From IMG/VR virus record IMGVR_UViG_3300033141_006329, positions 124,001 through 188,000 of that record: 64,000 nucleotides of DNA. The stretch is one strand, 5' to 3'. Below the pieces are notes generated by a model, which saw only the letters and a program-made list of their open reading frames with translations, did no database searches and was not told where the DNA came from. A program made the translations under genes and the position numbers. How positions within the stretch are numbered: position 1 is the first letter of the stretch; the number at the start of each line of letters is the position of its first letter. Positions 1,412 through 52,691 of this stretch are shown here, piece by piece.

Positions 1412-1426
1412 AGGACAAACTATAAA
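1412..1426 (+). promoter_or_regulatory. Putative late promoter motif AGGACAAACTATAAA
   Basis: One of 9 near-identical intergenic copies upstream of genes. Confidence 0.7.
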
Positions 1427-1444
1427 CAATAGAAGGAGAAATAA

Positions 1445-1897
1445 ATGAGACTTTACGATCTGTTGGAAGATATCCTGCTTTACACTGAACAGGAACAAGA
1501 AGATCCACCCGAAGAACAAGAGGCTCCAGATGAGGAAGCTCAAGCGGAACCTCCTGCAGAGGAATATGAAGAAGAACCCGCAGCGGGTGGGGATGAATTT
1601 GGAGAACCAGAAGTATCTCCTGAAGAAACAATCACAATCATAGATAAGGCATATAGACTTAAGAAGATATATTCGCGGCTAATAGCCCTATCTCGTATAT
1701 TAGATTATGAAACAGATCCTAAATTAGAGGAAATTAGAGATAAGACCTTGGAAGCTATAGACCTCTTTCATATCATCGTTTCAAATTTCGATAGTTTTAA
1801 GGATAAGTTAGACAATATAATAGATGGATTTTATAAATTTTTAGAGAAAGCGACAGAAGAGCTGGATAAATTAACGAAGGAAACGAAGGAAGAATAG
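1445..1897 (+). CDS. Acidic prohead core/scaffold-like protein
   Basis: Very acidic N-half with LLE motif; between portal and prohead protease; AGGAG RBS. Confidence 0.5.
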   Translation: MRLYDLLEDILLYTEQEQEDPPEEQEAPDEEAQAEPPAEEYEEEPAAGGDEFGEPEVSPEETITIIDKAYRLKKIYSRLIALSRILDYETDPKLEEIRDKTLEAIDLFHIIVSNFDSFKDKLDNIIDGFYKFLEKATEELDKLTKETKEE

Positions 1898-1906
1898 GAG
1901 AGAGAT

Positions 1907-2593
1907 ATGTATATAATTTCTGAAGCATCAAGTGTAAGAACAATTCCTAAGAAATTAAAATCACTGAAAGAAGGTAGAATCCGATTGAAAGTTGGTCTTC
2001 AAACAGGTGATGTTATTAATAGGAATAGAAGGAGATATAGTAAAGGTTTACTAGAGAACGGAGTTAAGAGTGTCAGCGAAAGAGTTAAAGAAGGTAGTTT
2101 TTTAGGCGAGTTGGACCATCCTACAGATAAGCAAAATCCATCACGCCAAATAACAATTTTATATAAGGAAGCATCTCACAAATTCTGCGAACTCGGATGG
2201 GAGGGCAATAAGCTCGTTTCGGTTATAGAGACTTTAAGAACCCCAAATGGAACCATTCTTAAAAATTTAGCAGAAGATGGTGTACCAGTAGGCTTCTCTT
2301 TTCGGGGGATGGGGGATTTACGACAATGCCACGAAGGAGGCAAGACCTTCTATGAAGTACAAGGACCTTTACATGTAATAACCTGGGATGCTGTATCTTA
2401 CCCTTCACACGATGGAGCGCGTCTAATAGAAATTACAGAAGGTGTAACAAAAATGATATATGAATCTACAGGATTGACGGAATCCGCCGATGGGATGATT
2501 TGTACAGAAGAAGGTCATTGTTATTTTCCCAATGATTTTGACAAACTTGTAGAACAACGAATATTTAGATTAACGAATAAATTTCAAATTTAA
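1907..2593 (+). CDS. gp21: Prohead protease, T4 gp21-like
   Basis: NRNRRRY, GELDHP, ASH, TPNG.IL, GFSFRGMG and WDAVSYPS motifs. Confidence 0.92.
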   Translation: MYIISEASSVRTIPKKLKSLKEGRIRLKVGLQTGDVINRNRRRYSKGLLENGVKSVSERVKEGSFLGELDHPTDKQNPSRQITILYKEASHKFCELGWEGNKLVSVIETLRTPNGTILKNLAEDGVPVGFSFRGMGDLRQCHEGGKTFYEVQGPLHVITWDAVSYPSHDGARLIEITEGVTKMIYESTGLTESADGMICTEEGHCYFPNDFDKLVEQRIFRLTNKFQI

Positions 2594-2612
2594 GGAAAGG
2601 AGGAAATAAATT

Positions 2613-3170
2613 ATGGCTATAACTGCACCAGTACAAGAACGAGCTGTAGACCCTTATAGTTCAAATAGATATTCATCAATAATCAACAGGCTATCTAGAA
2701 TAGTTACTAGTGGGAGCGATGTGATCCTTTATCCTTTTCAATCATTCCAGTTAACACGTTTGAGTGATACAGAGATTAGCGTGGGTCCAGGAATGTGTAT
2801 TAAGGATGATGTATTGATACATATAAAGGAAACATTTGCTTTGGATTTTGAAGACAATGCTCATTATATAGATGATGATTATGCTATGGATTCTGCTGGA
2901 TATTACTATATGGTTTTACAATATTACTATGCGAGATCTTTACCTGCTCCTCGTGCATGGATTAAGATAATTAGAGATACAGCTGGATTATATAGAGCAG
3001 ACAATAAATCTGATAGTTATATTTTCTTAGGAGCTGCAAAAATAGTAGATGATGGTGGATATAAATTGGAAGATCCCGATTGTTTATATTATTCAGATCC
3101 TGACTATCCCTCTGTGATAAGATCTACCCAAAGTGGAAATTGGACATATGTTGATGGGGGGACATTATAA
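2613..3170 (+). CDS. Putative virion structural protein (paralogue of next gene)
   Basis: Shares G.C.I..V.I.IK, Y.FLG and terminal DGG with 3170..3799; late operon. Confidence 0.5.
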   Translation: MAITAPVQERAVDPYSSNRYSSIINRLSRIVTSGSDVILYPFQSFQLTRLSDTEISVGPGMCIKDDVLIHIKETFALDFEDNAHYIDDDYAMDSAGYYYMVLQYYYARSLPAPRAWIKIIRDTAGLYRADNKSDSYIFLGAAKIVDDGGYKLEDPDCLYYSDPDYPSVIRSTQSGNWTYVDGGTL

Positions 3171-3799
3171 TGTCAGAGAGAACTATAACATTGCCACCCA
3201 CAGAACAATATTCTATTATAGAGACCTTTAGTGCAAACACTGCTGATATAATAAACCAAGCAATAATTCATATGGTAGGAAATCCTCCAGTGACAGGTAG
3301 CAACTCTATATATGGAGATGTTTATGACCTAACAGAAGATATTGAATATAACCCCTGTGTATTACCAGACTCATTTATAATTACAAAAACAAGTTCCACA
3401 ATTTTGACAGTGGGATTAGGAGAATGTTTTATCAATGGTGTATATATTAAAATTAAAGCTGAAAAGTCATTATCTGCAAATAGTGCGGATTCATATATAG
3501 ATGGAGCAGTAGCACACTCTGGAGATATATATGTCGTCGTAAAATATGATCCTACAGAGATTGCACCGAATGCATATGTTGGCCTCATTAAAAAAGCTAC
3601 ATATGTTGCATTGTCAGATTCAGATAAAAAGAAATATTTGTTTCTAGGATCTTTAGATGCAACTTATATATCATCAACAGTGAGTGATATTATAACATAT
3701 TATTATGATGTAGATGATGATACACAAACCAGAAGTTACCCCCATAATTTTTTAGATGGTGGTTGGCTTGATTTGCCACCAGATCTATGGCACCCATAG
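3170..3799 (+). CDS. Putative virion structural protein
   Basis: Paralogue of 2613..3170; TAATG coupling. Confidence 0.5.
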   Translation: MSERTITLPPTEQYSIIETFSANTADIINQAIIHMVGNPPVTGSNSIYGDVYDLTEDIEYNPCVLPDSFIITKTSSTILTVGLGECFINGVYIKIKAEKSLSANSADSYIDGAVAHSGDIYVVVKYDPTEIAPNAYVGLIKKATYVALSDSDKKKYLFLGSLDATYISSTVSDIITYYYDVDDDTQTRSYPHNFLDGGWLDLPPDLWHP

Positions 3800-3810
3800 G
3801 AGAAGATAGT

Positions 3811-4512
3811 ATGGAAGGTATAAATATGGAGAGATTGAAGGATATGCAGGAAATATGGAGAGAAGCACTTGATATGATATGGGAGGAAGGTCTGGAACAA
3901 GTCAATATCAACAAAAGTGGAAGACACGGTAGTTATAAAGGAACGCCATTTCATCATTGGACTTGGAATCTCTATCATCCTGATGATCCTAAAATATTAG
4001 GTGATAGTATGCATATTCATCATAAAGATTTGAATCATTTAAATGACCATATATCTAATCTTCAAAAAATGACTAGTGCCGAACATACGAGCTTACATAT
4101 GACCGGCCATTGCCCATCAAAAGAAACCAGACAAAAAAGGTCTGAATCACAAATGGGTGAAAAAAATCACATGTACGGGCGTATAGGTAAGGATAATCCT
4201 CGAACTAATACACATCATACAATTGAATCTAAGCTATTAATGTCACAAAATAAAAAAGGTAAGTGCTGCGGAAAAGATAACCCCTTTTATAATAAACATC
4301 ACACGATAGAAAGTAGACAAGCAATGTCTATTAATCGTACTGACGTTTCGGGTAAAAATAATCCTAATGCAAAGGCTGTAGTGGCGGAATATAAAGAATA
4401 TTCCACTATGAAATCGGCTGGTGAGGCTTTAAACGTGAGTCCAGATACCATAAATCATCGCATCAAAACAAACAAACCAGGATATTCATATATTCCTAAA
4501 AACAAAAACTAA
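3811..4512 (+). CDS. HNH homing endonuclease with NUMOD3-like repeats
   Basis: HIHHKDLNHLNDHISNL...EH..LH HNH motif; GKDNPFYNKHHT repeats; start chosen from GGAG RBS. Confidence 0.85.
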   Translation: MEGINMERLKDMQEIWREALDMIWEEGLEQVNINKSGRHGSYKGTPFHHWTWNLYHPDDPKILGDSMHIHHKDLNHLNDHISNLQKMTSAEHTSLHMTGHCPSKETRQKRSESQMGEKNHMYGRIGKDNPRTNTHHTIESKLLMSQNKKGKCCGKDNPFYNKHHTIESRQAMSINRTDVSGKNNPNAKAVVAEYKEYSTMKSAGEALNVSPDTINHRIKTNKPGYSYIPKNKN

Positions 4513-10819: not shown

Positions 10820-10834
10820 AGGACAAACTATAAA
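10820..10834 (+). promoter_or_regulatory. Putative late promoter motif AGGACAAACTATAAA
   Basis: Identical to 1412 copy; follows hairpin GGGGTTAAA/TTTAACCCC. Confidence 0.7.
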
Positions 10835-10910: not shown

Positions 10911-11990
10911 ATGAGTTTATTACATGTAACATTTGATGGAGAAACAATTTGTGCAATGAGACCAGAGGATCCCACTAAGACTTTTTCAAGTAGTGATGTT
11001 CCTAGTGGTACGGCATCTGTTATTTATAAGGCTGCCAAAATCTCATCTAAAAGTCATGGTAAAACCTTAACCACTGGTCTACCCACCCTCACATCCGCCG
11101 AAATAGCCACCAAAATATCCGATAGAGTAGATGCCCTTACAGCCGTTACACCCGGCGAAGTTATATATGATGGTACTAGTGATACAATAGGTACTATATC
11201 CACTTATGACGCCGACTTAGACGCTATAGATCAGACAAAAGTCCTAAAACCCACAGCCGCAGAAATCCAAGCAAAAATAGATGAAACAAGAGGATTCACC
11301 GAAGCAGAAGCCCAGCAACATGCTGATCAAGAAAATCATGTAAATTTATGTTCAAGCCTCACGGCAAAATCCACAGGTACTTGTACTATAGATGGTGTTA
11401 CACTTAGTGACTCATCCGCTGATTTTGTTACTGATGTAGTAGCCGCAAATGATACAGTAGTTATTGGTAGTGATATGGCATTTGTTGTAGATAGTACCAC
11501 AGATGAAATTACATTATCACATGCTATCGCTGAAGGTGATTACAACGTATATACACCAATGAGTTTATCCGACGCTATGGCTGCGATGAGGACCAAAGAT
11601 AATGATGGTGATACCATTGATGACTTAACTGATAACGAAGCAGATACAGCCCTTACAGTCGCATCTAAGACCGCTCTCGCAACACAGCAAGTTAATGTTG
11701 TTGTTGATGGTTGTTTAGAAGTTCCGACTCTTTATACAGAATTAGAATCCGGCAATTGTACAACGTCCACTACTACTCTAACTGATGGTACCGCTGACTT
11801 TGTTACTGCTGGTGTAGCTGAAGATGATTTAGTAAAAGTTGATGGTGGTATGTATAAGGTAGCCTCAGTAACTAGTGCTACGGTTTTAGAATTGAAGGTA
11901 GCCCCAGCTCCAGAACTTGCAGAAGCCACATCATATTCCGTATTGAACAGTGCATTTATGGCACAATTTGATTATATAAAATCCGCGTAG
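10911..11990 (+). CDS. Putative virion structural protein with internal duplication
   Basis: Thr/Ala/Asp-rich; TL.D..ADFVT..V...D.V occurs twice; late motif upstream. Confidence 0.5.
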   Translation: MSLLHVTFDGETICAMRPEDPTKTFSSSDVPSGTASVIYKAAKISSKSHGKTLTTGLPTLTSAEIATKISDRVDALTAVTPGEVIYDGTSDTIGTISTYDADLDAIDQTKVLKPTAAEIQAKIDETRGFTEAEAQQHADQENHVNLCSSLTAKSTGTCTIDGVTLSDSSADFVTDVVAANDTVVIGSDMAFVVDSTTDEITLSHAIAEGDYNVYTPMSLSDAMAAMRTKDNDGDTIDDLTDNEADTALTVASKTALATQQVNVVVDGCLEVPTLYTELESGNCTTSTTTLTDGTADFVTAGVAEDDLVKVDGGMYKVASVTSATVLELKVAPAPELAEATSYSVLNSAFMAQFDYIKSA

Positions 11991-12416: not shown

Positions 12417-12431
12417 AGGACAAATTAAAAA
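12417..12431 (+). promoter_or_regulatory. Putative late promoter motif AGGACAAATTAAAAA
   Basis: Motif copy upstream of lysis genes. Confidence 0.65.
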
Positions 12432-12464: not shown

Positions 12465-13025
12465 ATGATACCTATATTAGGTGCGTTGATTGGGGGCCTG
12501 ATGAAGAATGGCTTAGGATTATTGGCTAATGTAGCAAAGAAAAAGGGTAAAGAATTTATAGAAGAAAGGACAGGAATAAGTCTTGACGACACAGATAATC
12601 TTACAGAGGAACAATTGCTAAAATTGAAGCAATATGAGATGGATCATGAGGAAGAATTGCTGAAAATAGCAATAGAAGATAAAAAGCTAAGTATAGAAGA
12701 ACAGAAGATGTTCTTGGGGGATGTTCAAGACGCTCGGGGCATGCAAAAACAGGCTCTGACGGGGCAAGGAGATTTGTTCTCAAAAAGATTTGTGTATTAC
12801 TACGCCGCATTTACTACTATATTTACGTTTATTTATATCTTTTGGATTACTTTTGGAACTATACCAACTGCGAATATTCGCTTTGCTGATACAATTCTGG
12901 GATTTTTAATTGGTTCAATTATTTCGGTTATTATCAACTTTTTCTATGGCAGCAGCGAGGGGTCAAAAGAGAAATCGGAAGAGCTTAAGGATAGTATAGC
13001 TAGTAAGATTAAAGGGGGAAATTAA
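12465..13025 (+). CDS. Holin-like membrane protein
   Basis: DVQDAR.MQ motif, two C-terminal TM helices, FFYGSS; directly upstream of endolysin. Confidence 0.65.
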   Translation: MIPILGALIGGLMKNGLGLLANVAKKKGKEFIEERTGISLDDTDNLTEEQLLKLKQYEMDHEEELLKIAIEDKKLSIEEQKMFLGDVQDARGMQKQALTGQGDLFSKRFVYYYAAFTTIFTFIYIFWITFGTIPTANIRFADTILGFLIGSIISVIINFFYGSSEGSKEKSEELKDSIASKIKGGN

Positions 13026-13027
13026 AA

Positions 13028-13405
13028 ATGGGTATGGTAAGTAAACAGTGGGAATTTCTCCAAGACTTGTGTAAATTGTTAGACAGAGCTAAAGATTTAG
13101 GATTCACGGTAACCGGAGGCGAATTACAAAGACCAATTTCTCTACAGCGTCTTTATGTAAAGACGGGCCGTTCGAAGACTATGCGATCCAGCCATCTAAA
13201 CAGATTAGCTATAGATTTAAACTTCTTTTTAAAGAATGAAAAAGGTAGGTTAAGATTAACTTGGAATAGAGAAGATATCCGACCACTCGGTGATTACTGG
13301 GAAAGCCTTGATCCTAAAAACGTATGGGGAGGGTCATGGCGTGGCCTAATCGATAAAGGTAAATCCACCTTTGTAGATGTTCCTCATTTCGAGAGAAGAT
13401 TATAG
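13028..13405 (+). CDS. Endolysin, peptidase M15 family
   Basis: R...Q..LY..GRS, SSHLNRLAID, WGGSW and DVPHFE zinc motifs. Confidence 0.88.
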   Translation: MGMVSKQWEFLQDLCKLLDRAKDLGFTVTGGELQRPISLQRLYVKTGRSKTMRSSHLNRLAIDLNFFLKNEKGRLRLTWNREDIRPLGDYWESLDPKNVWGGSWRGLIDKGKSTFVDVPHFERRL

Positions 13406-14803: not shown

Positions 14804-14818
14804 AGGACAAACTAAAAA
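14804..14818 (+). promoter_or_regulatory. Putative late promoter motif AGGACAAACTAAAAA
   Basis: Motif copy. Confidence 0.65.
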
Positions 14819-15365: not shown

Positions 15366-15380
15366 AGGACAAACTAAAAA
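15366..15380 (+). promoter_or_regulatory. Putative late promoter motif AGGACAAACTAAAAA (capsid operon)
   Basis: Motif copy followed by AGGAGG RBS. Confidence 0.7.
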
Positions 15381-15399: not shown

Positions 15400-15807
15400 A
15401 TGGAAATTTCGAAACTTATAGAATGTAACGGACACAATACATCTACCGAAGATTTATTATCATACTTGTCTCAAATAGTTCTCACTCAGACAGATGAAAA
15501 GATTGAACAGAAGAGAAGAACTTTGGACACTGTTAAGGAGTCAGTCTCTGAGTCAAAGGATGATTTAAAAATCTTAAAGGAGAGATTAATACGTGTGAGG
15601 TCTGAACAACGACGATTAGATGCGCTTTATAAGGTACTCAAATTAATCGACAACCTAAAACAAGAGGGTGTCATGATTGGAGCCAATAAAGCAAAGATCT
15701 CAAATTTATTGTACAAGGTTCAGGATCAAGATGTGAAGAGTTTGATTAAATTAAAATCTAGGCTCTCTACATATATTCCCGATCACAGCAAAATAACTAT
15801 GTCCTAA
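15400..15807 (+). CDS. Coiled-coil protein, possible scaffold
   Basis: Start moved to ATG 15400 (RBS and promoter motif lie upstream); immediately before capsid gene. Confidence 0.55.
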   Translation: MEISKLIECNGHNTSTEDLLSYLSQIVLTQTDEKIEQKRRTLDTVKESVSESKDDLKILKERLIRVRSEQRRLDALYKVLKLIDNLKQEGVMIGANKAKISNLLYKVQDQDVKSLIKLKSRLSTYIPDHSKITMS

Positions 15808-15821: not shown

Positions 15822-17282
15822 ATGAAACATTTATTGAAAGAAACTTACGACCGAACCAAAAGGATGACTGGTATTGATGTACGGTCTCCACAGGGGTTCA
15901 AACAAACTTTAGCAGATCCTAATGCATTTAAGGTTTATGCAAAATCATTATCCGAAGGTCTTGACAAACAAGATCAAGAGGATTTCATGCTGTTAGCAGA
16001 GTGTACTCGTCAGGCATTGATGGAAAATTCTATGTTCCAACTCAATCCTTATGAGACATTAACTATGCCTGTATTACGTAACTTTTATCCCCGCCTTATA
16101 GCTAGGGAATTAGTAAACGTTATGCCTATTGATAAACCTGATGTAATTAAGGGTTTTATTCATGCGAAATTTAAGAAACATGGCGAATCCGCTTTTGATC
16201 ATAATTTCCCAAGTACAGCTACAGATATTTCTCGTGGTCCTTCTGTTGGTATTAATGTAACTAAGACTGCCAATATTGGTACTACTGATATTCTAGCTGA
16301 AGCTGGACTAAGTTCAAGTCAGAGTCATGTGGAACACGATTTTCATATCACTGGTATTTATGATGCAACATCTGGTAGCCCAGCGGTTGTTGATATTATT
16401 CCTACTGTCGATGGTATGTTTTCAGAGACGGTTACTACAGCAAGTCATGAGACTGATGTAATTTCTGGTCACATCGACTTTTTGAATGGAACAATTACGT
16501 GGTCTTCTGCTAATGGTGCGGTTACAGCTATTCGTTATACTGCTGTATGTTCATTAGAAGAGAATCAAATTAATCCTACTGTGAAATTTGAAGTAGAAAA
16601 AATTAGATTTACGACCGTAGATCGAAGAATATCTGCTGAATGGACAATCAACATGGAGCAGGATGTGAAGGCTCTGTGGGATCTGTCATTACAGGGAGAA
16701 TTCGTTAATATAATTGGTGAGCAGATTGCATTGGATATCGATCGTGAGATCATTAATGCTCTCGTGGCTGCTAATGCTGCTTTAAACCCAGCATCTCATA
16801 CACAAACATTTAACCTTTATCCGCCTACAGCTTTTACGTGGGGAAGGAAAATGTGGTATGAGAATGTTATTCCTACACTCAATAACTTAAGTGCACAAAT
16901 TTATAATAGTACATTAATGGGTCCTGCTAATACTTTAGCATGTAATCCTCTTGATGCTGCTGTATTTGAGTCTTTAAATAGTTTTGAGTATACTGGTAAT
17001 AGTGTTGACGGTGGTGATGTTGGATATAGAAGTGCAACTGTAACTGGTGGAAAATGGAAAATACTGGTAAGCTCTATTGTACCACAAGGTAAAGTAATAG
17101 CTAAATATCGTAGTTCTGATTTATCTCGTGCGGCATACGTGTATGCCCCATACGTGCCAGCCCTACTTTCGCCGTATCCTTTGGGAAATATTCCCTCATT
17201 GACAATTTTAACTCGCTATTCGAGTAAAGTTATTCGTCATAAGGCTCTTGGTGTTCTTAATATTACTGATGTTGCTCCTTAA
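15822..17282 (+). CDS. gp23: Major capsid protein, T4 gp23-like
   Basis: P.LIARELVNV.P, R.ISAEWT...EQD..A, IA..IDREII, YVYAPYVP and LTRY motifs. Confidence 0.93.
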   Translation: MKHLLKETYDRTKRMTGIDVRSPQGFKQTLADPNAFKVYAKSLSEGLDKQDQEDFMLLAECTRQALMENSMFQLNPYETLTMPVLRNFYPRLIARELVNVMPIDKPDVIKGFIHAKFKKHGESAFDHNFPSTATDISRGPSVGINVTKTANIGTTDILAEAGLSSSQSHVEHDFHITGIYDATSGSPAVVDIIPTVDGMFSETVTTASHETDVISGHIDFLNGTITWSSANGAVTAIRYTAVCSLEENQINPTVKFEVEKIRFTTVDRRISAEWTINMEQDVKALWDLSLQGEFVNIIGEQIALDIDREIINALVAANAALNPASHTQTFNLYPPTAFTWGRKMWYENVIPTLNNLSAQIYNSTLMGPANTLACNPLDAAVFESLNSFEYTGNSVDGGDVGYRSATVTGGKWKILVSSIVPQGKVIAKYRSSDLSRAAYVYAPYVPALLSPYPLGNIPSLTILTRYSSKVIRHKALGVLNITDVAP

Positions 17283-18830: not shown

Positions 18831-18956
18831 TTAAAATTATACTTTAAAACCTACCATTCTTTAACCTTCTTATTTTTAACATTCATCACACCTCTCTTAA
18901 ATTTGTCCACACCATCATGTGGGATTTTATCCACTCAAAGCAATTTCCTCCTTATA

Positions 18957-38251: not shown

Positions 38252-38782
38252 TTAAACATTCTGCTCCTCCTTTATTTTTTGAATATATGGTTTTAATTCC
38301 TCAAACGATACGGGTTTATAATCCCAAACATCTACTCCCACATTTATTACATTTTTTTGAATTTTAAACAGATCGTGTACATGGGCACATATAAAAATCT
38401 TAGATCTGTCAATACAACTCAAGGCAGGATCATGACACAATATTAAATCAATACCATCAATAGTAATTTCTAAACTTGTATGTACACTCCGAAACCCTAT
38501 ATTATTTACATATGAAAAAGGTTTAAGGGTATCATGATTTCCCAATATTAAAATTTTTATTCCTTTTAATTTTCTAATAACCGACTGATAATAATTCATA
38601 TGTTGGTTTGATCTGAGACTTAAATCACCAACAATATAAACAGTATCATCTTTTCCAACGACCTCATTATGATTTTTTATTAAAGCTTTGTCCATCTCTT
38701 CGCTGGTTTTGTATGGGCGATTACAATACAGAATTGCATTGTAATGACCATAGTGTGGATCCGCCGTAAAGTATATACTCAT
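38252..38782 (-). CDS. Calcineurin-like metallophosphoesterase
   Basis: DPHYGH, GD, GNHD, H and HVH motifs; INVGVD. Confidence 0.9.
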   Translation of the reverse strand: MSIYFTADPHYGHYNAILYCNRPYKTSEEMDKALIKNHNEVVGKDDTVYIVGDLSLRSNQHMNYYQSVIRKLKGIKILILGNHDTLKPFSYVNNIGFRSVHTSLEITIDGIDLILCHDPALSCIDRSKIFICAHVHDLFKIQKNVINVGVDVWDYKPVSFEELKPYIQKIKEEQNV

Positions 38783-38870
38783 TATCCTCTCTCCTTTCTT
38801 TAAAAATAAAATTAGCAAACAAGGTTCTTCATTCATAATTTAATATATATAGTTGAACCGCATATTAGGT

Positions 38871-38885
38871 AGGACAAACTATAAA
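38871..38885 (+). promoter_or_regulatory. Putative late promoter motif AGGACAAACTATAAA
   Basis: Motif copy at divergent junction. Confidence 0.7.
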
Positions 38886-38916
38886 GAAAACATTGAATTA
38901 GGAGGGTATATGTATT

Positions 38917-40164
38917 ATGGGGTTTTGTCCTTTTTTATCATTGAGAAAAATAATACAAGTGAATGTTGCACCAAGGACAATTGGTGGTAGCATCACAAGA
39001 GATAATGGGAGTACGGTAACGTCGTGGATTCCAGGAACAGAAGAAGCTGTTTATAAACCCACATCTATTTCTGCTGCTATAGACACAGTAGATTACAATT
39101 CGGCTATAACATATGAACCTTGTCAAACTACAGCATGTCAATTATGGGATGATAAAAATAGTAGATGTGGCGCAAGAAGTTCAGATTTTATATACAATGG
39201 CAACACAGTTGAATCTGATGCAATAGTTAATATTATAAAAGCTGTAGTAGGTTCATACAGTCAAATAACTTCAGGTAATACATTGGTCCAAGAATTTCAA
39301 GATGTTGTAGGAAAAAGCACAGAGCAAGATAATTCAAGTAGTTTATATAAATATCTTCAGGATGTTATAGGAACACATGCTGAGAAAGATGGTATTAATA
39401 ATTCAACTAGTCTAATAAACTATCTACAGGATGTTGTAGGAAAAAATGCAGATAAGGATAATGATAAAAGTCTGTTATCATTCCTATCATCAATATTAGG
39501 GGCAAATACAGATAAGGATTCTGGTAATTCTTTTCTTAAACAGTTTACAGAAATAGTAGGATCAATAACAGACAAAGATGTAGCATCAGCTGATTGGGGA
39601 ATTTTAACCAGTCTCCTGAGTACATTCAGATTAACACATGTACCATCTGGAGAAGCACCCGCACCCTCAACACTGATAATGGAATTTTTAAATAAAACAG
39701 ATGCAGATAAGGTGGATTTTAGTTCATTGGGAGTTTCGGGTAGTATATATGGTCACGAGTTTATGATATATGAATCAAACCCGGATGATTTACCACCCAT
39801 ACTTAAAACGATACAGGAACATCCAGATTTTAAAACAGATGATATAGTAGATTTAGCAAATAGTAATTGTTCAGTGACTAATACTGTACCAGGGCATGAT
39901 AGTACTGATGAATGGGAATATACAATAGAAGCGACTGATGGTACAACAGATTTTGTAGTTGATGGTATAACTACGGATATGTATGTATTCGTTGAAAGCA
40001 TAAATAAAGTGGGAACCATAACTGAAGTTGCTCCGGATAGTGTTGCTACAAAATTAAAAATAAATATGGGCGTATATGATATTGATCCTTTACCAAACCT
40101 GTCATATTTCTTTATAGCAGGTAGGAAAAGAATATCATTTGCAGAATATGAATCCATGTTTTGA
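38917..40164 (+). CDS. Putative virion (baseplate/spike-associated) protein with internal repeats
   Basis: FCPF...C....CQLW motif; QDVVG...D...SL repeats; next to PAAR-like gene. Confidence 0.45.
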   Translation: MGFCPFLSLRKIIQVNVAPRTIGGSITRDNGSTVTSWIPGTEEAVYKPTSISAAIDTVDYNSAITYEPCQTTACQLWDDKNSRCGARSSDFIYNGNTVESDAIVNIIKAVVGSYSQITSGNTLVQEFQDVVGKSTEQDNSSSLYKYLQDVIGTHAEKDGINNSTSLINYLQDVVGKNADKDNDKSLLSFLSSILGANTDKDSGNSFLKQFTEIVGSITDKDVASADWGILTSLLSTFRLTHVPSGEAPAPSTLIMEFLNKTDADKVDFSSLGVSGSIYGHEFMIYESNPDDLPPILKTIQEHPDFKTDDIVDLANSNCSVTNTVPGHDSTDEWEYTIEATDGTTDFVVDGITTDMYVFVESINKVGTITEVAPDSVATKLKINMGVYDIDPLPNLSYFFIAGRKRISFAEYESMF

Positions 40165-41738: not shown

Positions 41739-41880
41739 ACTACCACAACTTCAAGTTGCAGCTTCCTGCTTCGCTGAAATCCACTTGACAAGGTTCTATA
41801 CAAGCAACCAAGTTAGAGGTTGATCTCTCAGCAGGCGTTGAACTGATGCGTCCCGCACCAGTTTGATTTAACCCTTTATA
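41735..41880 (-). ncRNA. Predicted omegaRNA/reRNA scaffold overlapping tnpB 3' end
   Basis: Position at right end as known for TnpB; 5' boundary approximate; guide would start at 41734 (AACAUUGUUACAGGUUCUAC). Confidence 0.55.
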
Positions 41881-42990
41881 GAGGATGTTCTTTGCAGCAT
41901 GAATGTCACGATCTTTTCTATAACCACAGTCGCAGACGAACATCCTATCTTTTAAGGTTAGTGATTTGTTAATTGCGTTACACGCAGGACATAATTTAGT
42001 GGAGGGATAGTATCTATCTACGAGCCTTAGAGTATGTGACTTTTTCTTTAAGTCACTCATTATTCCTCCAAGGATTGAATGTTGAACTGATTTTCCAAAC
42101 CACTTCTCGCTCCACCCTTTAATATTCTCGTCTTGCACACAGACAATTTTATACTTCTTTGTGATATGCGAAACAATTTTGTTTTTCGCATCTTTCTTCT
42201 GATTAGTTAACTTGTTGTATTTCTTAGCTATCTTCGAATTGAGTTTCCTATTATTCTTAGAGCCTTTCTTCTTGTGTTTCTTCTTTCGTTGAAGACGTTT
42301 TAGACTTTCTGGTATTGGGAATGAGAAGCTATGCTTCTCACCATTATCAAAAGTAAGAGAAGTCTTGATGCCGAAGTCAATGCCTATAGCTTCCTGTTCA
42401 AACACTTTCTCTTCCTTCGGTAAATAGCAAGTGACATGTAAGAAATAATCTTCGCATTTTCGTACGAGGTTCGCTGTTGCAATCTCTGCATTTGAAGGGA
42501 TTTGTTTCAAACCTATCAGTTTGAAACTACCCTTAAATCCTTGCAGCTTGAGATACTTGCCTCGCAGCTTATGCGTACTATTGAATTGCTTCAGATAAAT
42601 GCTATTCGATCTACTCTTGAACTTCAATCTACCTACTTTCTTACCTTTCTTCTTCTTAGCAGATAGTCCACAAATGTTGTGAAACAACCTCTCTCGAACG
42701 CCCTGCTTCATCTGAGAAGAAATCGCTTCAAGCGAACGAGTTTCGGCGATTTTATCTTTTCCGCAAATTGAGATCTCGTTCACTTTAGTATTAAAATTTA
42801 CCGGGTTATCTGTACCTAACATACAATTATACAACCACTTAGCTTCTAAGAATAAACGATCCAGGTACTCTCGTTTTTTCTTGGAGAGATGTGATTTATC
42901 AAACTTCAGCTCGTAAACTTTACAAATCAAAGACTTACGTCTTTCTCTTGTAGCCTTACCAGCCAGTTTGATTCTTTCGTTTTTTGTCAT
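41740..42990 (-). CDS. tnpB: TnpB RNA-guided endonuclease
   Basis: AIGIDFGIK (RuvC-I), YYPSTKLC.AC, C.CG...DRDIHAAKNI (RuvC-III). Confidence 0.93.
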   Translation of the reverse strand: MTKNERIKLAGKATRERRKSLICKVYELKFDKSHLSKKKREYLDRLFLEAKWLYNCMLGTDNPVNFNTKVNEISICGKDKIAETRSLEAISSQMKQGVRERLFHNICGLSAKKKKGKKVGRLKFKSRSNSIYLKQFNSTHKLRGKYLKLQGFKGSFKLIGLKQIPSNAEIATANLVRKCEDYFLHVTCYLPKEEKVFEQEAIGIDFGIKTSLTFDNGEKHSFSFPIPESLKRLQRKKKHKKKGSKNNRKLNSKIAKKYNKLTNQKKDAKNKIVSHITKKYKIVCVQDENIKGWSEKWFGKSVQHSILGGIMSDLKKKSHTLRLVDRYYPSTKLCPACNAINKSLTLKDRMFVCDCGYRKDRDIHAAKNILYKGLNQTGAGRISSTPAERSTSNLVACIEPCQVDFSEAGSCNLKLW

Positions 42991-43008
42991 TTACAGATTT
43001 CCTCTTTA

Positions 43009-43023
43009 TTTGTAGTTTGTCCT
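43009..43023 (-). promoter_or_regulatory. Late promoter motif AGGACAAACTACAAA inside the IS, upstream of tnpB
   Basis: Reverse complement of TTTGTAGTTTGTCCT, followed by GAGG RBS and ATG. Confidence 0.65.
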
Positions 43024-43133
43024 CTGAGAAGGCTGGGAAAAAACAACAGAATTCATCCACAGCTTCAGGTTGTGGTATTCTTCTTGGATGGGAGGAATAA
43101 TATCCTTAGATAAAAATGTGTCTGATTTTATAA

Positions 43134-43148
43134 AGGACAAACTGTAAA
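43134..43148 (+). promoter_or_regulatory. Putative late promoter motif AGGACAAACTGTAAA
   Basis: Motif copy. Confidence 0.65.
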
Positions 43149-43235
43149 GAAGAATTTAAATTTTATTTCTTGTGAGGAAATAGAAATTAAGAGTTAGTTT
43201 TATAAGGAACTCAAAAAATTGAAAGGAGAATTAAA

Positions 43236-44273
43236 ATGAGTTTTGAATTATTAGATGATGTTTTGTTAGAGTCTGGGTATAAAACTCCAGATGAAGAGAA
43301 AAAAGAAGAGGAAGTTGTCAATACTGAAGATAATGATATATTCGAGGAATTAGATGGAATGATCGAAGGGGCTATGAGAGAATCCCTGAGAAATACTGTT
43401 TTTTGTAGTGAAAATGATAGTGATGTTAAATTAGAGCATCTCGAAGTAGTTGAGAGTGCTGAATTTACCGAAGAGCAAATGACTAAGTTTATGGATACTA
43501 CGATATATCCTATATTGGAGATGTCTGGTTCATTAGAAGATAATGATAATGAAACTGTATCGTTGCCAATATTTGAAATAGTTGGTCTCTTAGAGGATTT
43601 AGGTTCAGATGAAATAACTGAGGAAAATGCTGATATAGAATTAGAAGCAATATGCGAATTCTATGGTATAAATGATGAAGATAGGGAAACTATCATTGCA
43701 GAGGCTACAGAATTGTTAGAATCACATGGTATAGATAAGCTTGATCCTTCAATGCAGGATGTTAGTCTTTTAGTATGTGAGACTATAGTTATTTTAGGCG
43801 AAGTTGATACGAGTGAAAATTTGGAAGAAGCAAAGAAGAAGGGTGGACGACCTACAAAGAAACAGGTTCAAATGAGAATACTCAGAGGACGCATAAAAGA
43901 TGCACCTGGAAAGGCTTTGGCTTATAGTAAAGAAAAAGGAAAAGAAGTTGGAAGTTGGGTTGCTGCTAAAGGTAAGGCAGGTTTGGCTAAAGGAAAAGAA
44001 GCTTTGGGTACGAAAAAAGGTAAGATTATAGCTGGTGCTATTACAATGGCTGCTGTAGCTGCTGCTGCTGCTCTTGCATATAGACGTAAGGGAGATAAAT
44101 GTAAAGGTCTTGATGGCGATGCGAAATCTAAATGTAAAGCCGCCGCTGTTAATGATGCAATCAAAGCATTGAACCAACAGAAATCACAATGTAAAAAAGC
44201 AAAAAATCCCGCCAAGTGTGCTGCTGGTGTTGATAAACAAATAGCAAAATGGAAAGGCCGCATGGCTGCATAA
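43236..44273 (+). CDS. Putative internal head protein: acidic N-half, basic C-half with hydrophobic helix
   Basis: Charge switch at LEEAKKK; many L-x-E sites; late motif upstream and terminator downstream. Confidence 0.55.
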   Translation: MSFELLDDVLLESGYKTPDEEKKEEEVVNTEDNDIFEELDGMIEGAMRESLRNTVFCSENDSDVKLEHLEVVESAEFTEEQMTKFMDTTIYPILEMSGSLEDNDNETVSLPIFEIVGLLEDLGSDEITEENADIELEAICEFYGINDEDRETIIAEATELLESHGIDKLDPSMQDVSLLVCETIVILGEVDTSENLEEAKKKGGRPTKKQVQMRILRGRIKDAPGKALAYSKEKGKEVGSWVAAKGKAGLAKGKEALGTKKGKIIAGAITMAAVAAAAALAYRRKGDKCKGLDGDAKSKCKAAAVNDAIKALNQQKSQCKKAKNPAKCAAGVDKQIAKWKGRMAA

Positions 44274-49759: not shown

Positions 49760-49804
49760 AGGACAAACTCTAAACTTAAACAATTTAAGAGAGGGGTTTG
49801 TCCT
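49760..49804 (+). promoter_or_regulatory. Late promoter motif forming an RBS-sequestering hairpin
   Basis: AGGACAAACTCT pairs with GGGGTTTGTCCT directly before ATG; inner stem CTTAAA/TTTAAG. Confidence 0.65.
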
Positions 49805-50998
49805 ATGGTTAGTTGTAAATTATGCGGTAAAAAATTTGAAACTTTAAGAGGTGTTGCTACGCATCTAAGATTTTGTAAAAAGAATCTGAATGAAATGAAA
49901 ATTGTAGATTATTATAATCAATTTATAAAACAAGGTATTGAAGGAAAGTGTGTACTGTGTGGAAAATATACTAGATTTAACGGATTAGATATAGGTTTTT
50001 CTACGTATTGTGGGAGTCGATGTGCAGCACTTGGTGTAAATAAAGGATTAAAGGCAAATCCCAGAATAAATGAACCAAAAAAGAAATCGGTTATCTGCAA
50101 AATGTGTAATAAAAAATTAAACAATATAAATAGCTTGGGGAACCATCTTAAATATTGTAAATCTAATATTGATAGATTAAATTCAAACCAATATTATAAT
50201 AAATATATAAAGAAAGATGATGAAGAATTATGTAAAACATGTGGAAATGTTACTAAATTCAAAGGTCTGGAGAAAGGTTATGATGCATATTGTAGTAAGA
50301 TTTGTTCAAACAGAGATAGACCGATTTCAGAAAAATTAAATAATACTATTATGTATACAGATAGATTACAAAAAATTGGACTTGAACCTATATATGAAGG
50401 TGAATATTTTACCGGACGCCAAGAGATAGAATTCAAGTGTTCAAAATGTAGTCGTATATTTAAAAATTATACATTTAATATATTAAAAATTAGAAACAAA
50501 TGTCCATTTTGTACAGATAAAAGTAGATCAATATCTGAAAGATTAATATATTCATATCTAAAACATAAATTTCATAAATATAATGTTTATAACAATTATA
50601 AAAAATTATTATATCCATTTGAAATAGATATAATAATGCCTTCTCTTAATATATCTTTAGAATATAATGGTCTTTATTATCATTCAAGTCAAAATTCTCA
50701 AAATAGAGATTTGTGGAAATCACATGGATGCATCAAAAATAATTTCAAGCATGTGGTTATATGGGAAGACGAGTTTAATATACATAATAAAGATTATAAA
50801 TTTATAGATACCATAATAAAAAATGCTATGGAATGTGATGTTAAAAAATACATGAAAAATACAAAATATTTTACAACATTTCCTATCAGTATAGCCGATA
50901 TAGACAACTTCGATAAAACTAAAAGATTTAAACTTTTACAGTTGAGTGAATGTAATAAAAACTTTAAAAGACCTCCAAGATCATTATTCGTCCCATAA
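49805..50998 (+). CDS. Free-standing homing endonuclease: duplicated zinc-finger module plus Vsr-like nuclease
   Basis: Two C..C...HL..C...C..CG....F.GL..G...YC modules; EIDI......LEYNGLYYH...IWED. Confidence 0.75.
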   Translation: MVSCKLCGKKFETLRGVATHLRFCKKNLNEMKIVDYYNQFIKQGIEGKCVLCGKYTRFNGLDIGFSTYCGSRCAALGVNKGLKANPRINEPKKKSVICKMCNKKLNNINSLGNHLKYCKSNIDRLNSNQYYNKYIKKDDEELCKTCGNVTKFKGLEKGYDAYCSKICSNRDRPISEKLNNTIMYTDRLQKIGLEPIYEGEYFTGRQEIEFKCSKCSRIFKNYTFNILKIRNKCPFCTDKSRSISERLIYSYLKHKFHKYNVYNNYKKLLYPFEIDIIMPSLNISLEYNGLYYHSSQNSQNRDLWKSHGCIKNNFKHVVIWEDEFNIHNKDYKFIDTIIKNAMECDVKKYMKNTKYFTTFPISIADIDNFDKTKRFKLLQLSECNKNFKRPPRSLFVP

Positions 50999-51024
50999 TT
51001 TCTAAAAATAATCAAAAAGATATT

Positions 51025-51052
51025 AGGGAGGGGCTTTCGCCCCTTCCTTTTT
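51025..51052. terminator. Intrinsic terminator
   Basis: AGGGAGGGGC-TTTC-GCCCCTTCCT followed by T tract, between convergent genes. Confidence 0.75.
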
Positions 51053-51791
51053 ATCCAACCATTTCTCCGGATCCTAACCGTATATCCCAAGAATACTTCC
51101 CACTTATATCCGATAGTTCATCGCTTATTTGATCTTTACTTTTAACCACAACTCCGCTAAAACATCCTAACGCAGTGTCTTGAAAACAACCTCTAATATG
51201 TTCGAATTGTGTCATATAGATCTCCTCTTGTATTGACTTGTTAATAGATAAATCGTTAAATATATCAATCAATGATGGTTTCTTAAAATCTATCCATACA
51301 TAATTTATGATACTTTCTGCTTCACCTTTAGTCGCACAATACTCATCCTCAAGAAGTTTCTCCTGAAGATCTTTCCTAGTAACTAGACATAAATCTCTAT
51401 CATTTGAACCACAGATATTAGATATAAGTTCTCTGGGATTTATACTTATATTAAATTTCTTCACCAACTCATGTAAAATAATACACATAGTCTCTGCTTT
51501 ATCGTATTCTATTCTACGCAATAACCCAATTGCTCTCTGCCCTGGTTTTATTATCAATGCCTCTATACCTTCCGCCGATATAAATTTAATGGAAGGAATA
51601 ATATTAATATTCAAATTATTACCTAAAACTTTTAAAGGATATTTAGTATACAAATCAAAATTTTCCGGAACATTAAAACTGACGGTTATAGGTGAATTAT
51701 TATATTTTATTGAACACACCTTCAGCCAATCAGCAACAGCAGAATAATTAGGAGAAGTTAAGCATACATTAAAGTCCTCTAAACATGTCAT
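51051..51791 (-). CDS. Hypothetical protein
   Basis: 246-aa ORF overlapping end of LRR gene. Confidence 0.55.
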   Translation of the reverse strand: MTCLEDFNVCLTSPNYSAVADWLKVCSIKYNNSPITVSFNVPENFDLYTKYPLKVLGNNLNINIIPSIKFISAEGIEALIIKPGQRAIGLLRRIEYDKAETMCIILHELVKKFNISINPRELISNICGSNDRDLCLVTRKDLQEKLLEDEYCATKGEAESIINYVWIDFKKPSLIDIFNDLSINKSIQEEIYMTQFEHIRGCFQDTALGCFSGVVVKSKDQISDELSDISGKYSWDIRLGSGEMVG

Positions 51792-52584
51792 CTTTGTCCT
51801 CCTCTTCTACTAGTTCTGTCCCTAATAAATTTTCATCTACTCCTAAATTAAAATATTCAGGACAAGATGTAATAAACTCTTTTTGTATAACTTCTTTGGT
51901 TTTGAATAAACCTTCAGTCATTAACATTTCCTCTACTATTGTGATAGCATCATTTATAGATATATTCTTAATATGAGATACTCTGGGTAGAAGACTGAAT
52001 ACAATGCGATCAGAACTATGCCTAGTGTGAGTTTTTATTTCAACTCCACCAAAAACTGCCATTATGAAAATATCACCACCTACTAAATTTACTACAAATT
52101 CATCATCCAACCAAGTGTATCTTTTAGATATAAAGGGTTTACCATTGAAGGTTTTTAAATTTGGTAGAGCTTTTAAAATATAGGATTGATGAAAAGGTAT
52201 ATCTGCATAGAGATGAACTAAATTTTTCAAATTACATAATGGAAGATAATTGTTGATACTATTGTTAGATATGTTTAGATATTGTAGAGTAGTCATATCT
52301 TTTAAGGGTGCTATATCACCTATACAGTTACTATACAAATCAATATGTTCTAAAGGAAGATTTTCTAAGGGTGTTAAATCACAAGCATACCCATTCTGCA
52401 TCCTAAGAGATATTAAATTTCTACATTTATGTAATCCTGTAAGATTAGTAATATTATCCTTTATTATTAATGATTTAACTTTTAAAAAATCCTCTTTAGT
52501 CAGTTTATGCATACAACTTAAACCAAGCATATGTTGTATACAACGCTTCATTACAGGATTAAGTGTTTTATATTTGTGTGTCAT
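51769..52584 (-). CDS. Leucine-rich repeat protein
   Basis: ITNLTGL..C.NL..L, DLTPL..L.L..IDL..N.I.DI.PL repeats; start from GGAGG RBS. Confidence 0.8.
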   Translation of the reverse strand: MTHKYKTLNPVMKRCIQHMLGLSCMHKLTKEDFLKVKSLIIKDNITNLTGLHKCRNLISLRMQNGYACDLTPLENLPLEHIDLYSNCIGDIAPLKDMTTLQYLNISNNSINNYLPLCNLKNLVHLYADIPFHQSYILKALPNLKTFNGKPFISKRYTWLDDEFVVNLVGGDIFIMAVFGGVEIKTHTRHSSDRIVFSLLPRVSHIKNISINDAITIVEEMLMTEGLFKTKEVIQKEFITSCPEYFNLGVDENLLGTELVEEEDKDDMFRGL

Positions 52585-52676
52585 TTTTATTTCCTCCATT
52601 TTTAAATTTTTTAAAACCACCTTTATATATCTGTTTTTTAATGAGTTCCTCCTATTCAATCCAAACCCTTTTATAA

Positions 52677-52691
52677 AGGACAAATTAAAAA
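52677..52691 (+). promoter_or_regulatory. Putative late promoter motif AGGACAAATTAAAAA
   Basis: Motif copy upstream of sheath gene. Confidence 0.65.

What the first reader, a model, noticed from the sequence alone, without database searches (positions are those of the whole stretch)
1412..52691. A 15-bp motif heads the structural gene islands (candidate late promoter)
Seen: AGGACAAAYTNWAAA at 1412, 10820, 12417, 14804, 15366, 38871, 43134, 49760 and 52677 on +, and at 43009-43023 on -. All are intergenic and roughly 10-90 bp before a start. I saw none before the array or ligase operons. Known: T4 late promoters are a bare TATAAATA read by gp55. Inference: an extended late promoter for a phage sigma factor or RNA polymerase encoded outside the window, with the conserved core (AGGACAAA) upstream of the TATA-like part.
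Basis: partly seen in the sequence, partly recalled or inferred. Interest (0 to 1): 0.6.

Follow-up and report, generated by a model that had tools for sequence, protein, structure and literature searches.

The report
Late promoter of a jumbo phage
A 15-base signal that sits just before the virus-particle genes of an uncultured giant marine-sediment phage is most likely the late promoter read by the phage's own AR9/phiKZ-type RNA polymerase, and it is far more sharply defined than the late promoters known for that kind of phage.

Summary
AGGACAAAYTNWAAA occurs 9 times in the window (0.02 expected) and 22 times in the 223-kb record. Every copy points at the next gene; 21 of 22 have a ribosome site and start 11-87 nt downstream. 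The genes served are structural: portal/protease, capsid, sheath, baseplate, tape measure, plus two mobile-element genes. Five related IMG/VR records repeat the motif 8-20 times each, against 0 for the backwards control.

No sigma-70 or T4 gp55 relative was found. An AR9-like AT-rich early motif heads the small-gene arrays.

- A sister class, AAAAnCCAC-N9-TGGACAAAYTAAAAA, precedes replication genes and the second polymerase operon.
- At the HNH gene the motif core forms the 5' arm of a hairpin that hides the ribosome site, as at T4 I-TevI. This places the transcription start inside the motif's 3' A-run.

No RNA data exist, so promoter function and the start site are inferred. I rate it a new variant of a known kind.

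The parts
1412..1426 (+). Class-1 (late) motif AGGACAAACTATAAA, 18 nt before ORF 1445-1897. The head maturation protease gene 1907-2593 follows and the portal-like gene 23-1387 lies just upstream.
10820..10834 (+). Class-1 motif, directly after a GC-rich hairpin and 76 nt before ORF 10911-11990 (359 aa, no family hit).
12417..12431 (+). Class-1 motif, 33 nt before ORF 12465-13025 (phrog_1544). An endolysin-like gene, 13028-13405, follows.
14804..14818 (+). Class-1 motif. The Shine-Dalgarno AGGAGG begins 2 nt after the motif end and the ATG is at 14834, so the transcript must start within the motif or at its 3' end.
15366..15380 (+). Class-1 motif before ORF 15400-15807 and the Gp23-type major capsid gene 15822-17282. 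The same position is conserved in relatives G001, G002 and G004.
38871..38885 (+). Class-1 motif, 31 nt before ORF 38917-40164. It lies back to back with the early-type motif on the other strand.
38838..38849 (-). Early-type AT-rich motif TATATATTAAAT, heading the minus-strand array of small genes (38836 down to about 19000, which includes the NAD-dependent DNA ligase gene 35723-37516). It shares TATATATTA with the AR9 early promoter.
43009..43023 (-). Class-1 motif with one mismatch (AGGACAAACTACAAA), 18 nt before the TnpB/OrfB_IS605-like gene 41740-42990.
43134..43148 (+). Class-1 motif, 87 nt before ORF 43236-44273 (345 aa), the head of a plus-strand module.
49760..49774 (+). Class-1 motif, 30 nt before the HNH homing-endonuclease gene 49805-50998.
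49760..49804 (+). Hairpin whose 5' arm is the motif core (49760-49771) and whose 3' arm covers the ribosome site up to the base before the AUG (49793-49804). Free energy -19.6 kcal/mol, z -4.2. It cannot form in an RNA that starts at motif position 14.
52677..52691 (+). Class-1 motif, 20 nt before the tail sheath gene 52712-54448.
18895..18927 (-). Class-2-like site: TGGACAAATTTAAGA (18895-18909) with the upstream AAAATCCCAC element, 88 nt before gene 17385-18806 (DUF559 / endonuclease-like).
59309..59323 (-). Degenerate class-2-like site TGAACAAATTAAAAA with AATCCAG upstream, in an intergenic gap of the second minus-strand array. A possible weak member.
56681..56695 (-). Variant AGGACATACTAAAGA in an intergenic gap. 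An identical 15-mer lies at G000 219018 (+), and a related AGGACATATTATAAA precedes the set-A polymerase operon in G004. A possible third, weaker form.

Best explanation
The window belongs to an uncultured jumbo phage of about 306 kb from marine sediment. Its transcription scheme is of the AR9/phiKZ type, with two phage-encoded multisubunit RNA polymerases.

AGGACAAAYTNWAAA is the late promoter. It is most likely read by the non-virion polymerase (set A: beta' about 890 aa, beta about 1,000 aa) together with a 481-aa homologue of AR9 gp226 / phiKZ gp68, the sigma-like specificity subunit.

I infer that GGACA corresponds to the AR9 -11..-8 element AACA, which AR9 reads on the template strand. 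Transcription would then begin in the 3' A-run, at about motif position 14, giving leaders of 13-89 nt.

A sister class with the same core plus an upstream AAAAnCCAC element, about -31 to -23 from the inferred start, drives replication genes and the set-A polymerase operon (middle or continuous expression). An AT-rich motif, TATATATTAAAT, drives the early small-gene arrays through the virion polymerase.

Shown: the motif, its statistics, orientation, gene association and conservation, the polymerase genes, and the fold match of the specificity subunit.
Inferred: that the motif is a promoter, which enzyme reads it, the start site, and the timing.
For: - Enrichment: 9 copies in the window vs 0.02 expected; 22 in the genome vs 1 for the control; the core is the top non-SD heptamer in non-coding DNA.
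- Orientation: strictly polar. 21/22 copies in G000 and 16/16 in G004 have an SD plus ORF within 160 nt downstream, against 32% and 18% of random positions.
- Genes served: portal/protease, Gp23-type capsid, sheath, baseplate hub and wedge, tape measure and virion proteins.
- Divergent junctions: the motif sits about 20 bp from the opposite-strand early motif, so no other + strand promoter can lie upstream.
- Conservation: 14, 11, 20, 11 and 8 copies in five related records, 0 for the controls. It is an island of identity before the gene preceding the capsid gene.
- No host-type signal: sigma-70-like promoter matches are not enriched in the structural block, 21 vs 28.8 expected.
- No sigma: no Sigma70_r2 or gp55 family match.
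- Two polymerase sets.
- Specificity subunit: the 481-aa protein gives phrog_25005 E 1.4e-4. Its AF2 model has pLDDT 85. The best PDB matches are 7s01_A (AR9 gp226), Foldseek E 1.6e-5 and VIA Z 20.4 over 408 residues, then phiKZ gp68 at Z 8-9; the next unrelated chain scores 5.8.
- Early expression of that subunit: its gene follows an early-type motif, as g226 does in AR9.
- Start site: SD sequences abut the motif, and the HNH hairpin makes regulatory sense only if late transcripts start 3' of the core.
- Published comparison: the AR9 late consensus AACA-N6-TA/G and early consensus AAATATATATTAT.
Against: - No RNA data. No public RNA run holds the sequence, so no 5' end supports a start site.
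- Which polymerase reads the motif rests on analogy. The set-B polymerase operon itself follows a class-1 copy (G000 38412), and the set-A operon follows a class-2 copy. The non-virion enzyme would therefore need first synthesis from an upstream early promoter.
- Both beta subunits resemble bacterial RpoB (E about 1e-75 to 1e-79) more than AR9 beta (1e-27 to 1e-37), and they are unsplit. The enzyme may behave differently from AR9's.
- Homology of the 481-aa protein rests on a predicted structure with global TM of only about 0.4. A sequence profile did not retrieve gp226 from the PDB.
- The alignment with AR9's AACA shares only ACA, and AR9's T at -1 has no counterpart.
- The upstream CCAC element was not seen in relative G004.
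- All records are incomplete (58-87%), so a sigma factor could lie in unseen DNA.
Confidence: 0.72

Rival explanations
1. The motif is a late promoter, but it is read by the other phage polymerase (set B, the large intein-bearing beta/beta' set) or by both enzymes. In that case the gp226-like protein is not the determinant.
For: The set-B operon lies in the record and is itself preceded by a class-1 copy. The assignment of set A as non-virion rests on small differences: 129.8 vs 97.9 bits to AR9 non-virion beta, and a weak virion-protein PHROG hit on set-B beta'.
Against: In AR9 and phiKZ the late-expressed polymerase is the packaged one, and it reads AT-rich early promoters. Such an early motif exists here and resembles AR9's. 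A gp226/gp68 homologue is known only as part of non-virion enzymes.
Confidence: 0.12
2. The motif is a promoter for the host RNA polymerase, redirected by an unrecognised phage sigma or gp55/gp33-like factor (the T4 model).
For: The 3' half resembles TATAAATA. The capsid protein is Gp23-type and the phage has a T4-like clamp loader. The records are 58-87% complete, so a factor could be missing.
Against: No phrog_234 (gp55) or Sigma70_r2 match was found in four related records. Two complete phage polymerases and a specificity subunit are present. With T4 spacing the start would fall inside or beyond the ribosome site at 14804 and at G004 115767.
Confidence: 0.07
3. The motif is not a polymerase recognition site. 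It would instead be the operator of a phage regulator, or an RNA-level element in 5' leaders such as a processing site or translational signal.
For: It always lies close to start codons. The AR9 study also reported conserved motifs within 5' UTRs.
Against: - The motif is asymmetric and strictly polar, unlike a typical dimeric operator.
- Its spacing to the start codon varies from 11 to 87 nt.
- Leaders are unstructured: 39 of 40 sites show no pairing of the core.
- It sits at divergent junctions where no upstream promoter for that strand exists.
- It is the only strongly enriched non-coding word besides the SD, so otherwise late genes would have no promoter signal at all.
Confidence: 0.06

Closest known systems
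Late promoters of Bacillus phage AR9, read by the non-virion RNA polymerase with gp226 (AACA-N6-T-A/G(+1); template strand 3'-UUGU-N6-AU-5')
   Same: - A jumbo phage with two multisubunit polymerases and a gp226-type specificity subunit.
- A single-block promoter near -10 with no -35 in the late class.
- An ACA core at the right distance from an A/purine start, if the start is motif position 14.
- Late copies before structural genes, with some genes carrying early plus late signals.
- An AT-rich early motif that shares TATATATTA.
   Different: - Here 13 of 15 positions are fixed or nearly so, against 6 loosely conserved positions in AR9. The promoter is therefore visible by sequence alone, which the review says fails for such phages.
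- G rather than A at the position aligned to AR9's -11, and no T at -1.
- A uracil requirement is unknown. A ThyA-family gene is present.
- beta and beta' are unsplit and much closer to bacterial RpoB/RpoC.
- A second class carries a sequence-specific upstream element, whereas the AR9 gp226 C-terminal domain contacts upstream DNA without sequence preference.
phiKZ middle and late promoters (late: TATG with G at +1; middle: a weak AT-rich motif at -24), read by the non-virion polymerase with gp68
   Same: The same enzyme family. Two non-early promoter classes are attributed to one polymerase. The 481-aa protein also matches gp68, with Z 8-9 over the C-terminal half.
   Different: phiKZ signals are minimal and not predictable from sequence. 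Here both classes share a long common core.
T4 late promoter TATAAATA (gp55 with gp33 and the gp45 clamp on host polymerase)
   Same: A -10-only late promoter in front of structural genes, with an A/T-rich TATAAA-like stretch. Late promoters are also used by mobile endonuclease genes.
   Different: No gp55 homologue was found. The invariant part is GGACAAA, upstream of the TATA-like stretch. The start is inferred inside the A-run rather than 6 nt beyond it. The phage brings its own polymerases.
T4 I-TevI / segB / Aeh1 mobE control: a hairpin hides the ribosome site on read-through RNA, and the late promoter starts inside the hairpin
   Same: At the HNH gene (window 49805) the 5' arm of a -19.6 kcal/mol hairpin is the promoter core and the 3' arm covers the ribosome site. 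An RNA starting at motif position 14 cannot fold it. The T4 design is described in PMC2988022.
   Different: A different phage lineage, polymerase and promoter. Only one of 40 sites has it. It is untested.

Membership tests
Promoters of AR9/phiKZ-type jumbo-phage non-virion RNA polymerases | The phage encodes two sets of beta/beta'-like subunits (virion and non-virion). | tested here: met
   Set B lies in the record: beta of 1350 aa, beta' in pieces of 310 and 1614 aa. Set A (beta' 890 aa, beta 996 aa) lies on a sibling contig with identical flanking proteins. Relative G004 carries both sets in one record. Unlike the known members, the subunits are not split into N and C halves.
Promoters of AR9/phiKZ-type jumbo-phage non-virion RNA polymerases | A gp226/gp68-type fifth subunit that confers promoter specificity. 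| tested here: met
   The gene is at G000 42598-44043 (481 aa). phrog_25005 gives E 1.4e-4. The AF2 model (pLDDT 85) has its best PDB matches at 7s01_A and 7um0_A (AR9 gp226; Z 20.4 and 18.4) and at phiKZ gp68 (Z 8-9). The match is by predicted fold; sequence identity is about 11%.
Promoters of AR9/phiKZ-type jumbo-phage non-virion RNA polymerases | The motif precedes late (structural) genes and is absent from early operons. | tested here: met
   The small-gene arrays lack the motif and are headed by an AT-rich motif instead. Timing is inferred from gene function, not measured.
Promoters of AR9/phiKZ-type jumbo-phage non-virion RNA polymerases | Primary transcript 5' ends at a fixed distance from the motif, appearing late and dependent on phage protein synthesis. 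| not testable with these tools
   No RNA run holds the sequence. There are only indirect constraints from ribosome sites that abut the motif and from the HNH hairpin.
Promoters of AR9/phiKZ-type jumbo-phage non-virion RNA polymerases | Match to the AR9 consensus AACA-N6-T-A/G, with template-strand and deoxyuridine-dependent recognition. | tested here: inconclusive
   Only ACA plus a purine start can be aligned. G replaces the first A and there is no T at -1. Strand and base-modification dependence cannot be tested. A ThyA-family gene is present.
T4-type late promoters (gp55-dependent) | A gp55-family late sigma encoded by the phage. | tested here: not met
   phrog_234, taken from T4 gp55 itself, finds nothing at E <= 1 in G000, G001, G002 or G004. 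Sigma70_r2 finds nothing either. These records are 58-71% complete.
T4-type late promoters (gp55-dependent) | A bare TATAAATA about 6 nt upstream of the start, with no other conserved bases. | tested here: not met
   The invariant bases are AGGACAAA. The TATA-like part varies (CTATAAA, TTAAAAA, CTGTAAA, CTCTAAA). T4 spacing would place the start inside or past the ribosome site at 14804.

The most novel reading that the evidence does not exclude
This sediment phage clade may carry a less diverged, unsplit form of the jumbo-phage two-polymerase system, in which the gp226-like subunit reads a long, information-rich promoter. One shared core would serve two temporal classes. The middle class would add a sequence-specific upstream element, AAAAnCCAC at about -31 to -23, contacted by the subunit's C-terminal domain. 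That would be the first bipartite, sigma-like promoter architecture for a non-virion jumbo-phage polymerase. Specificity might also depend on 7-deazaguanine-modified G in the GG of the core, as AR9's depends on deoxyuridine.
Probability: 0.25. Interest if true: 0.7.

Novelty: new variant of a known kind. Interest (0 to 1): 0.55.

Why it matters
A 2020 review states that sequence analysis fails to predict the middle and late promoters of polymerase-encoding jumbo phages. AR9's late signal is six loosely conserved bases and phiKZ's is TATG.

Here a clade of uncultured phages shows a sharp 15-base late signal and a related second class. That gives a ready template set for biochemistry on the gp226/gp68 family, namely how a non-sigma subunit reads DNA. 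It also allows late and middle genes to be annotated in these genomes by sequence alone.

The polymerases are unsplit and closer to bacterial RpoB/RpoC, which could help in tracing how these viral enzymes arose.

The hairpin at the homing-endonuclease gene suggests that the T4 strategy of confining translation to late-promoter transcripts has arisen in an unrelated transcription system.

Tried and rejected
- **Nucleotide search against cultured phages:** no match. The nearest capsid proteins are AR9/PBS1 and staphylococcal jumbo phages at about 22% identity.
- **Public reads:** only four DNA runs, from marine sediment or unspecified metagenomes, and no RNA. Read laying was not used and no start site could be mapped.
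- **T4 model:** gp55 (phrog_234) and Sigma70_r2 searches were blank.
- **Second polymerase set in the record:** phrog_3148, phrog_2962 and PF00562 find only one set. It was found by walking off the left end on a sibling contig.
- **Metagenome scan with set-A beta:** swamped by unrelated polymerase genes, and it did not return the 306-kb contig. Those 80 loci, some from gut metagenomes, were not analysed or used.
- **IMG/VR scan for the exact 15-mer:** mostly single chance hits. Only multi-copy records were followed.
- **Sequence-only link of the 481-aa protein to gp226:** weak (BLASTP E 0.009) or absent. The link rests on the fold.
- **RNA-structure role for the motif:** rejected, since 39 of 40 leaders show no pairing of the core. 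The second inverted copy, at 38924-38931, gives no significant fold (z 0.16).
- **Rfam and tRNA scans of the window:** nothing.
- **Most distant relative, G003 (59% capsid identity):** no exact copy. The orthologous spot reads AGGAATAAATTATAAA, and no repeated variant could be defined in 21 kb.
- **Bacteroidota -7 (TAnnTTTG) reading of the reverse strand:** rejected from memory of that consensus. The orientation and spacing do not fit, and strong Shine-Dalgarno sites argue against such a host.


Full report
**1. The observation**

The pattern AGGACAAAYTNWAAA has nine exact copies on the + strand of the window, at the coordinates given. Dinucleotide-preserving shuffles give 0.02 on average and never more than 1. 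The copy claimed at 43009-43023 (-) exists but reads AGGACAAACTACAAA, one mismatch from the pattern.

Each copy ends 15-87 nt before a start codon with a Shine-Dalgarno sequence on the same strand. Five further AGGACAAA octamers in the window lack the 3' half.

**2. Genome context**

The window is bases 124001-188000 of a 223,370-bp IMG/VR record with 33% G+C, estimated 71% complete and labelled 'provirus'. Identical proteins occur on JGI contigs of 306,137 and 289,095 bp. The record therefore looks like a trimmed piece of a phage genome of about 306 kb. DNA runs that hold parts of it are mainly marine-sediment metagenomes, and none is RNA.

- The record holds 22 exact copies, against 1 for the backwards control.
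- All point at the next gene. The few that fall 'inside' an ORF do so only because my gene model took the longest possible ORF.
- 21 of 22 have an SD plus an ORF of at least 30 aa within 160 nt, compared with 32% of random positions.
- GGACAAA is the most over-represented non-coding heptamer apart from ribosome-site words.

**3. What the motif precedes**

In the window:
- an ORF next to the portal gene, followed by the head protease
- the operon ending in the Gp23-type major capsid protein
- a block with an endolysin-like gene
- the tail sheath gene
- an HNH homing endonuclease gene
- on the - strand, a TnpB-like gene

Elsewhere in the record: baseplate hub and wedge, virion proteins, the 1,914-aa tape measure protein and a glycosyltransferase.

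Sigma-70-type promoter matches are not enriched in the structural block, 21 against 28.8 expected.

**4. A second class with the same core**

Listing every GGACAAA splits the sites cleanly in two.

- **Class 1.** A before the core, no conserved upstream sequence, variable positions 11-12.
- **Class 2.** T (sometimes C) before the core, an almost invariant TAAAAA, and an upstream element AAAAnCCAC ending 9 nt before the T. Seventeen sites were aligned.

Class-2 sites precede the clamp loader, a RusA-like resolvase, an exonuclease-like gene and the DNA-polymerase operon, and one lies upstream of the ribonucleotide-reductase gene. One degenerate member lies in the window at 18895-18909 (-). This upstream element was not seen in relative G004.

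**5. Conservation in relatives**

- The capsid protein retrieves four IMG/VR relatives.
- The three at 71% identity carry GGACAAAYTNWAAA 14, 11 and 20 times, with 0 for the control.
- Two further records carry it 11 and 8 times.
- The copy before the gene preceding the capsid gene is at the orthologous place. In an alignment it stands out as an island of identity in diverged flanks.
- In G004 the heptamer is again the top non-SD word, and 16 of 16 class-1 copies face a gene start.
- The 59%-identity relative has AGGAATAAATTATAAA at that place and no exact copy.

**6. Who reads it**

*Polymerase set B.* The record encodes a beta-like protein of 1,350 aa and a beta'-like protein. The beta' is in pieces of 310 aa and 1,614 aa. 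The longer piece gives LAGLIDADG and intein-splicing domain hits.

*Polymerase set A.* Relative G004 has this set plus a second, smaller one: beta' of 894 aa and beta of 1,013 aa. Walking off the left end of the record on the 289-kb sibling contig shows the same smaller set in the window's own phage: beta' of 890 aa and beta of 996 aa. It lies behind a class-2 site.

*No sigma.* No Sigma70_r2 and no T4 gp55 family match exists in four related records.

*The specificity subunit.* The PHROG built on the AR9 464-aa non-virion subunit gives a weak hit (E 1.4e-4, 0 of 14 control genomes) in a 481-aa ORF at G000 42598-44043 and in its G004 orthologue.
- This ORF belongs to a family of at least 71 uncharacterised metagenomic proteins.
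- An AlphaFold model from 39 of them has a mean pLDDT of 85.
- Its best matches in the whole PDB are AR9 gp226 (7s01_A, 7um0_A) and then phiKZ gp68 (8que_B, 9rjs_B), all with Foldseek probability of at least 0.89. The next chain has probability 0.06.
- VIA-align gives Z 20.4 over 408 residues for gp226 and Z 8-9 for gp68. The next unrelated chain scores 5.8. Chain 7s01_A is indeed that AR9 protein.
- The gene is preceded by an early-type motif with one mismatch. In AR9, g226 likewise has early promoters.

**7. Early signal**

TATATATTAAAT occurs five times in the record, always intergenic. Four copies head the minus-strand arrays of small genes. One of these is at window 38838-38849, which heads the array that contains the NAD-dependent ligase gene. 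G004 has 11 exact copies.

The motif shares TATATATTA with the AR9 early promoter AAATATATATTAT. Relaxed to one mismatch it is not enriched in the window, so only the exact, extended copies count. Several lie about 20 bp back to back with a class-1 copy. At those junctions the class-1 motif is the only candidate promoter for its strand.

**8. Where transcription would start**

- At 14804 the ribosome site begins 2 nt after the motif.
- At G004 115767 it abuts the motif.
- Several other sites leave only 11-15 nt to the start codon.

The start must therefore lie within the motif's 3' end or immediately after it. If ACA is aligned with AR9's A(-10)C(-9)A(-8), +1 falls on motif position 14, an invariant A.

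Independent support comes from the HNH gene. Bases 49760-49771 (the core) pair with 49793-49804 (the ribosome site up to the AUG) in a hairpin of -19.6 kcal/mol, z -4.2. An RNA beginning at position 14 loses it, folding at only -5.1 kcal/mol with z 0.5. This is the design described for T4 I-TevI, segB and Aeh1 mobE. It is found at only 1 of 40 sites, and the other leaders are essentially unstructured. That also argues against an RNA-structure role for the motif.

**9. Assessment**

The motif is real, polar, conserved, and tied to late functions. The phage lineage has the full AR9/phiKZ-type apparatus and lacks a recognisable sigma.

The most likely reading is a late promoter for the non-virion polymerase with the gp226-like subunit. 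A sister middle or continuous class shares the core.

The following remain inferences, because no RNA or biochemical data exist:
- which enzyme acts
- the start site
- the timing
- any role of the template strand or of modified bases

The class-1 copy before set B fits a packaged, late-made virion enzyme. The class-2 copy before set A implies that the first non-virion enzyme comes from read-through of an early unit, followed by self-reinforcement.

Compared with AR9 (AACA-N6-TA/G) and phiKZ (TATG), this promoter is unusually information-rich, and the polymerases are unsplit and closer to bacterial ones. I therefore rate it a new variant of a known kind.

**10. Operators' notes**

- The loci that come from gut metagenomes are microbial or viral contigs, and they were left unused.
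- No alternative genetic code was needed.

Noticed in passing
G000 27565-37990 (-), outside the window (loci L011:565-10990): The set-B beta' gene is fragmented. A 310-aa ORF carries the start of Rpb1 domain 2. A 194-aa ORF lies between. A 1,614-aa ORF resumes domain 2 (DFDGD at residue 83) and gives LAGLIDADG and intein-splicing hits, so at least one intein and perhaps a free-standing insertion interrupt it. Rfam finds no intron there.
   Followed up: partly
G000 about 4-9 kb and 38412-39449; sibling contig loci L043/L125; G004 locus L025:10489-11112: There is a 7-deazaguanine pathway set: PTPS (QueD-like), radical-SAM (QueE-like), a GATase-QueC fusion and GTP cyclohydrolase I. The phage DNA probably carries modified guanines, and the promoter core contains GG. 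A ThyA-family gene lies at G000 78795-79712.
   Followed up: no
whole record G000 compared with JGI contigs Ga0366833_1000001 (306,137 bp) and Ga0366832_1000005 (289,095 bp): The IMG/VR 'provirus' record looks like a trimmed lytic jumbo-phage contig. The trimmed part includes bacterial-looking genes such as the second RNA polymerase, which may be why it was cut as 'host'.
   Followed up: partly
window 41740-42990 (-) and 49805-50998 (+); also 3787-4512 (+): Mobile-element genes sit inside the structural region, and two have their own late-type motif: a TnpB/OrfB_IS605-like gene and an HNH homing endonuclease. A further HNH-like gene lies between head genes.
   Followed up: partly
G000 194841-195047 (+), outside the window: One exact class-1 copy has no ORF within 160 nt. 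It is followed by a GC-rich, hairpin-prone stretch, and an inverted core copy lies just upstream (194828 -). This could be a small RNA or a decoy. ARAGORN finds no tRNA.
   Followed up: partly
G000 99645-100882, outside the window: Three unusually long non-coding gaps (264, 397 and 289 nt) lie in an otherwise tightly packed genome, next to class-1 and class-2 sites. They were not examined for RNA genes or an origin of replication.
   Followed up: no
window 33906-34880 (-): A leucine-rich-repeat protein (LRR_14, LRR_4, LRR_8 hits) is encoded within the early small-gene array, which is unusual for a phage.
   Followed up: no
G000 27014 (-) and window 38849 (-) (G000 162849): Two early-type motif copies share about 35 nt of identical flank and run straight into ATGAATG. 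With AR9 spacing (start 8 nt after TATATATTA) the mRNA would be nearly leaderless.
   Followed up: partly
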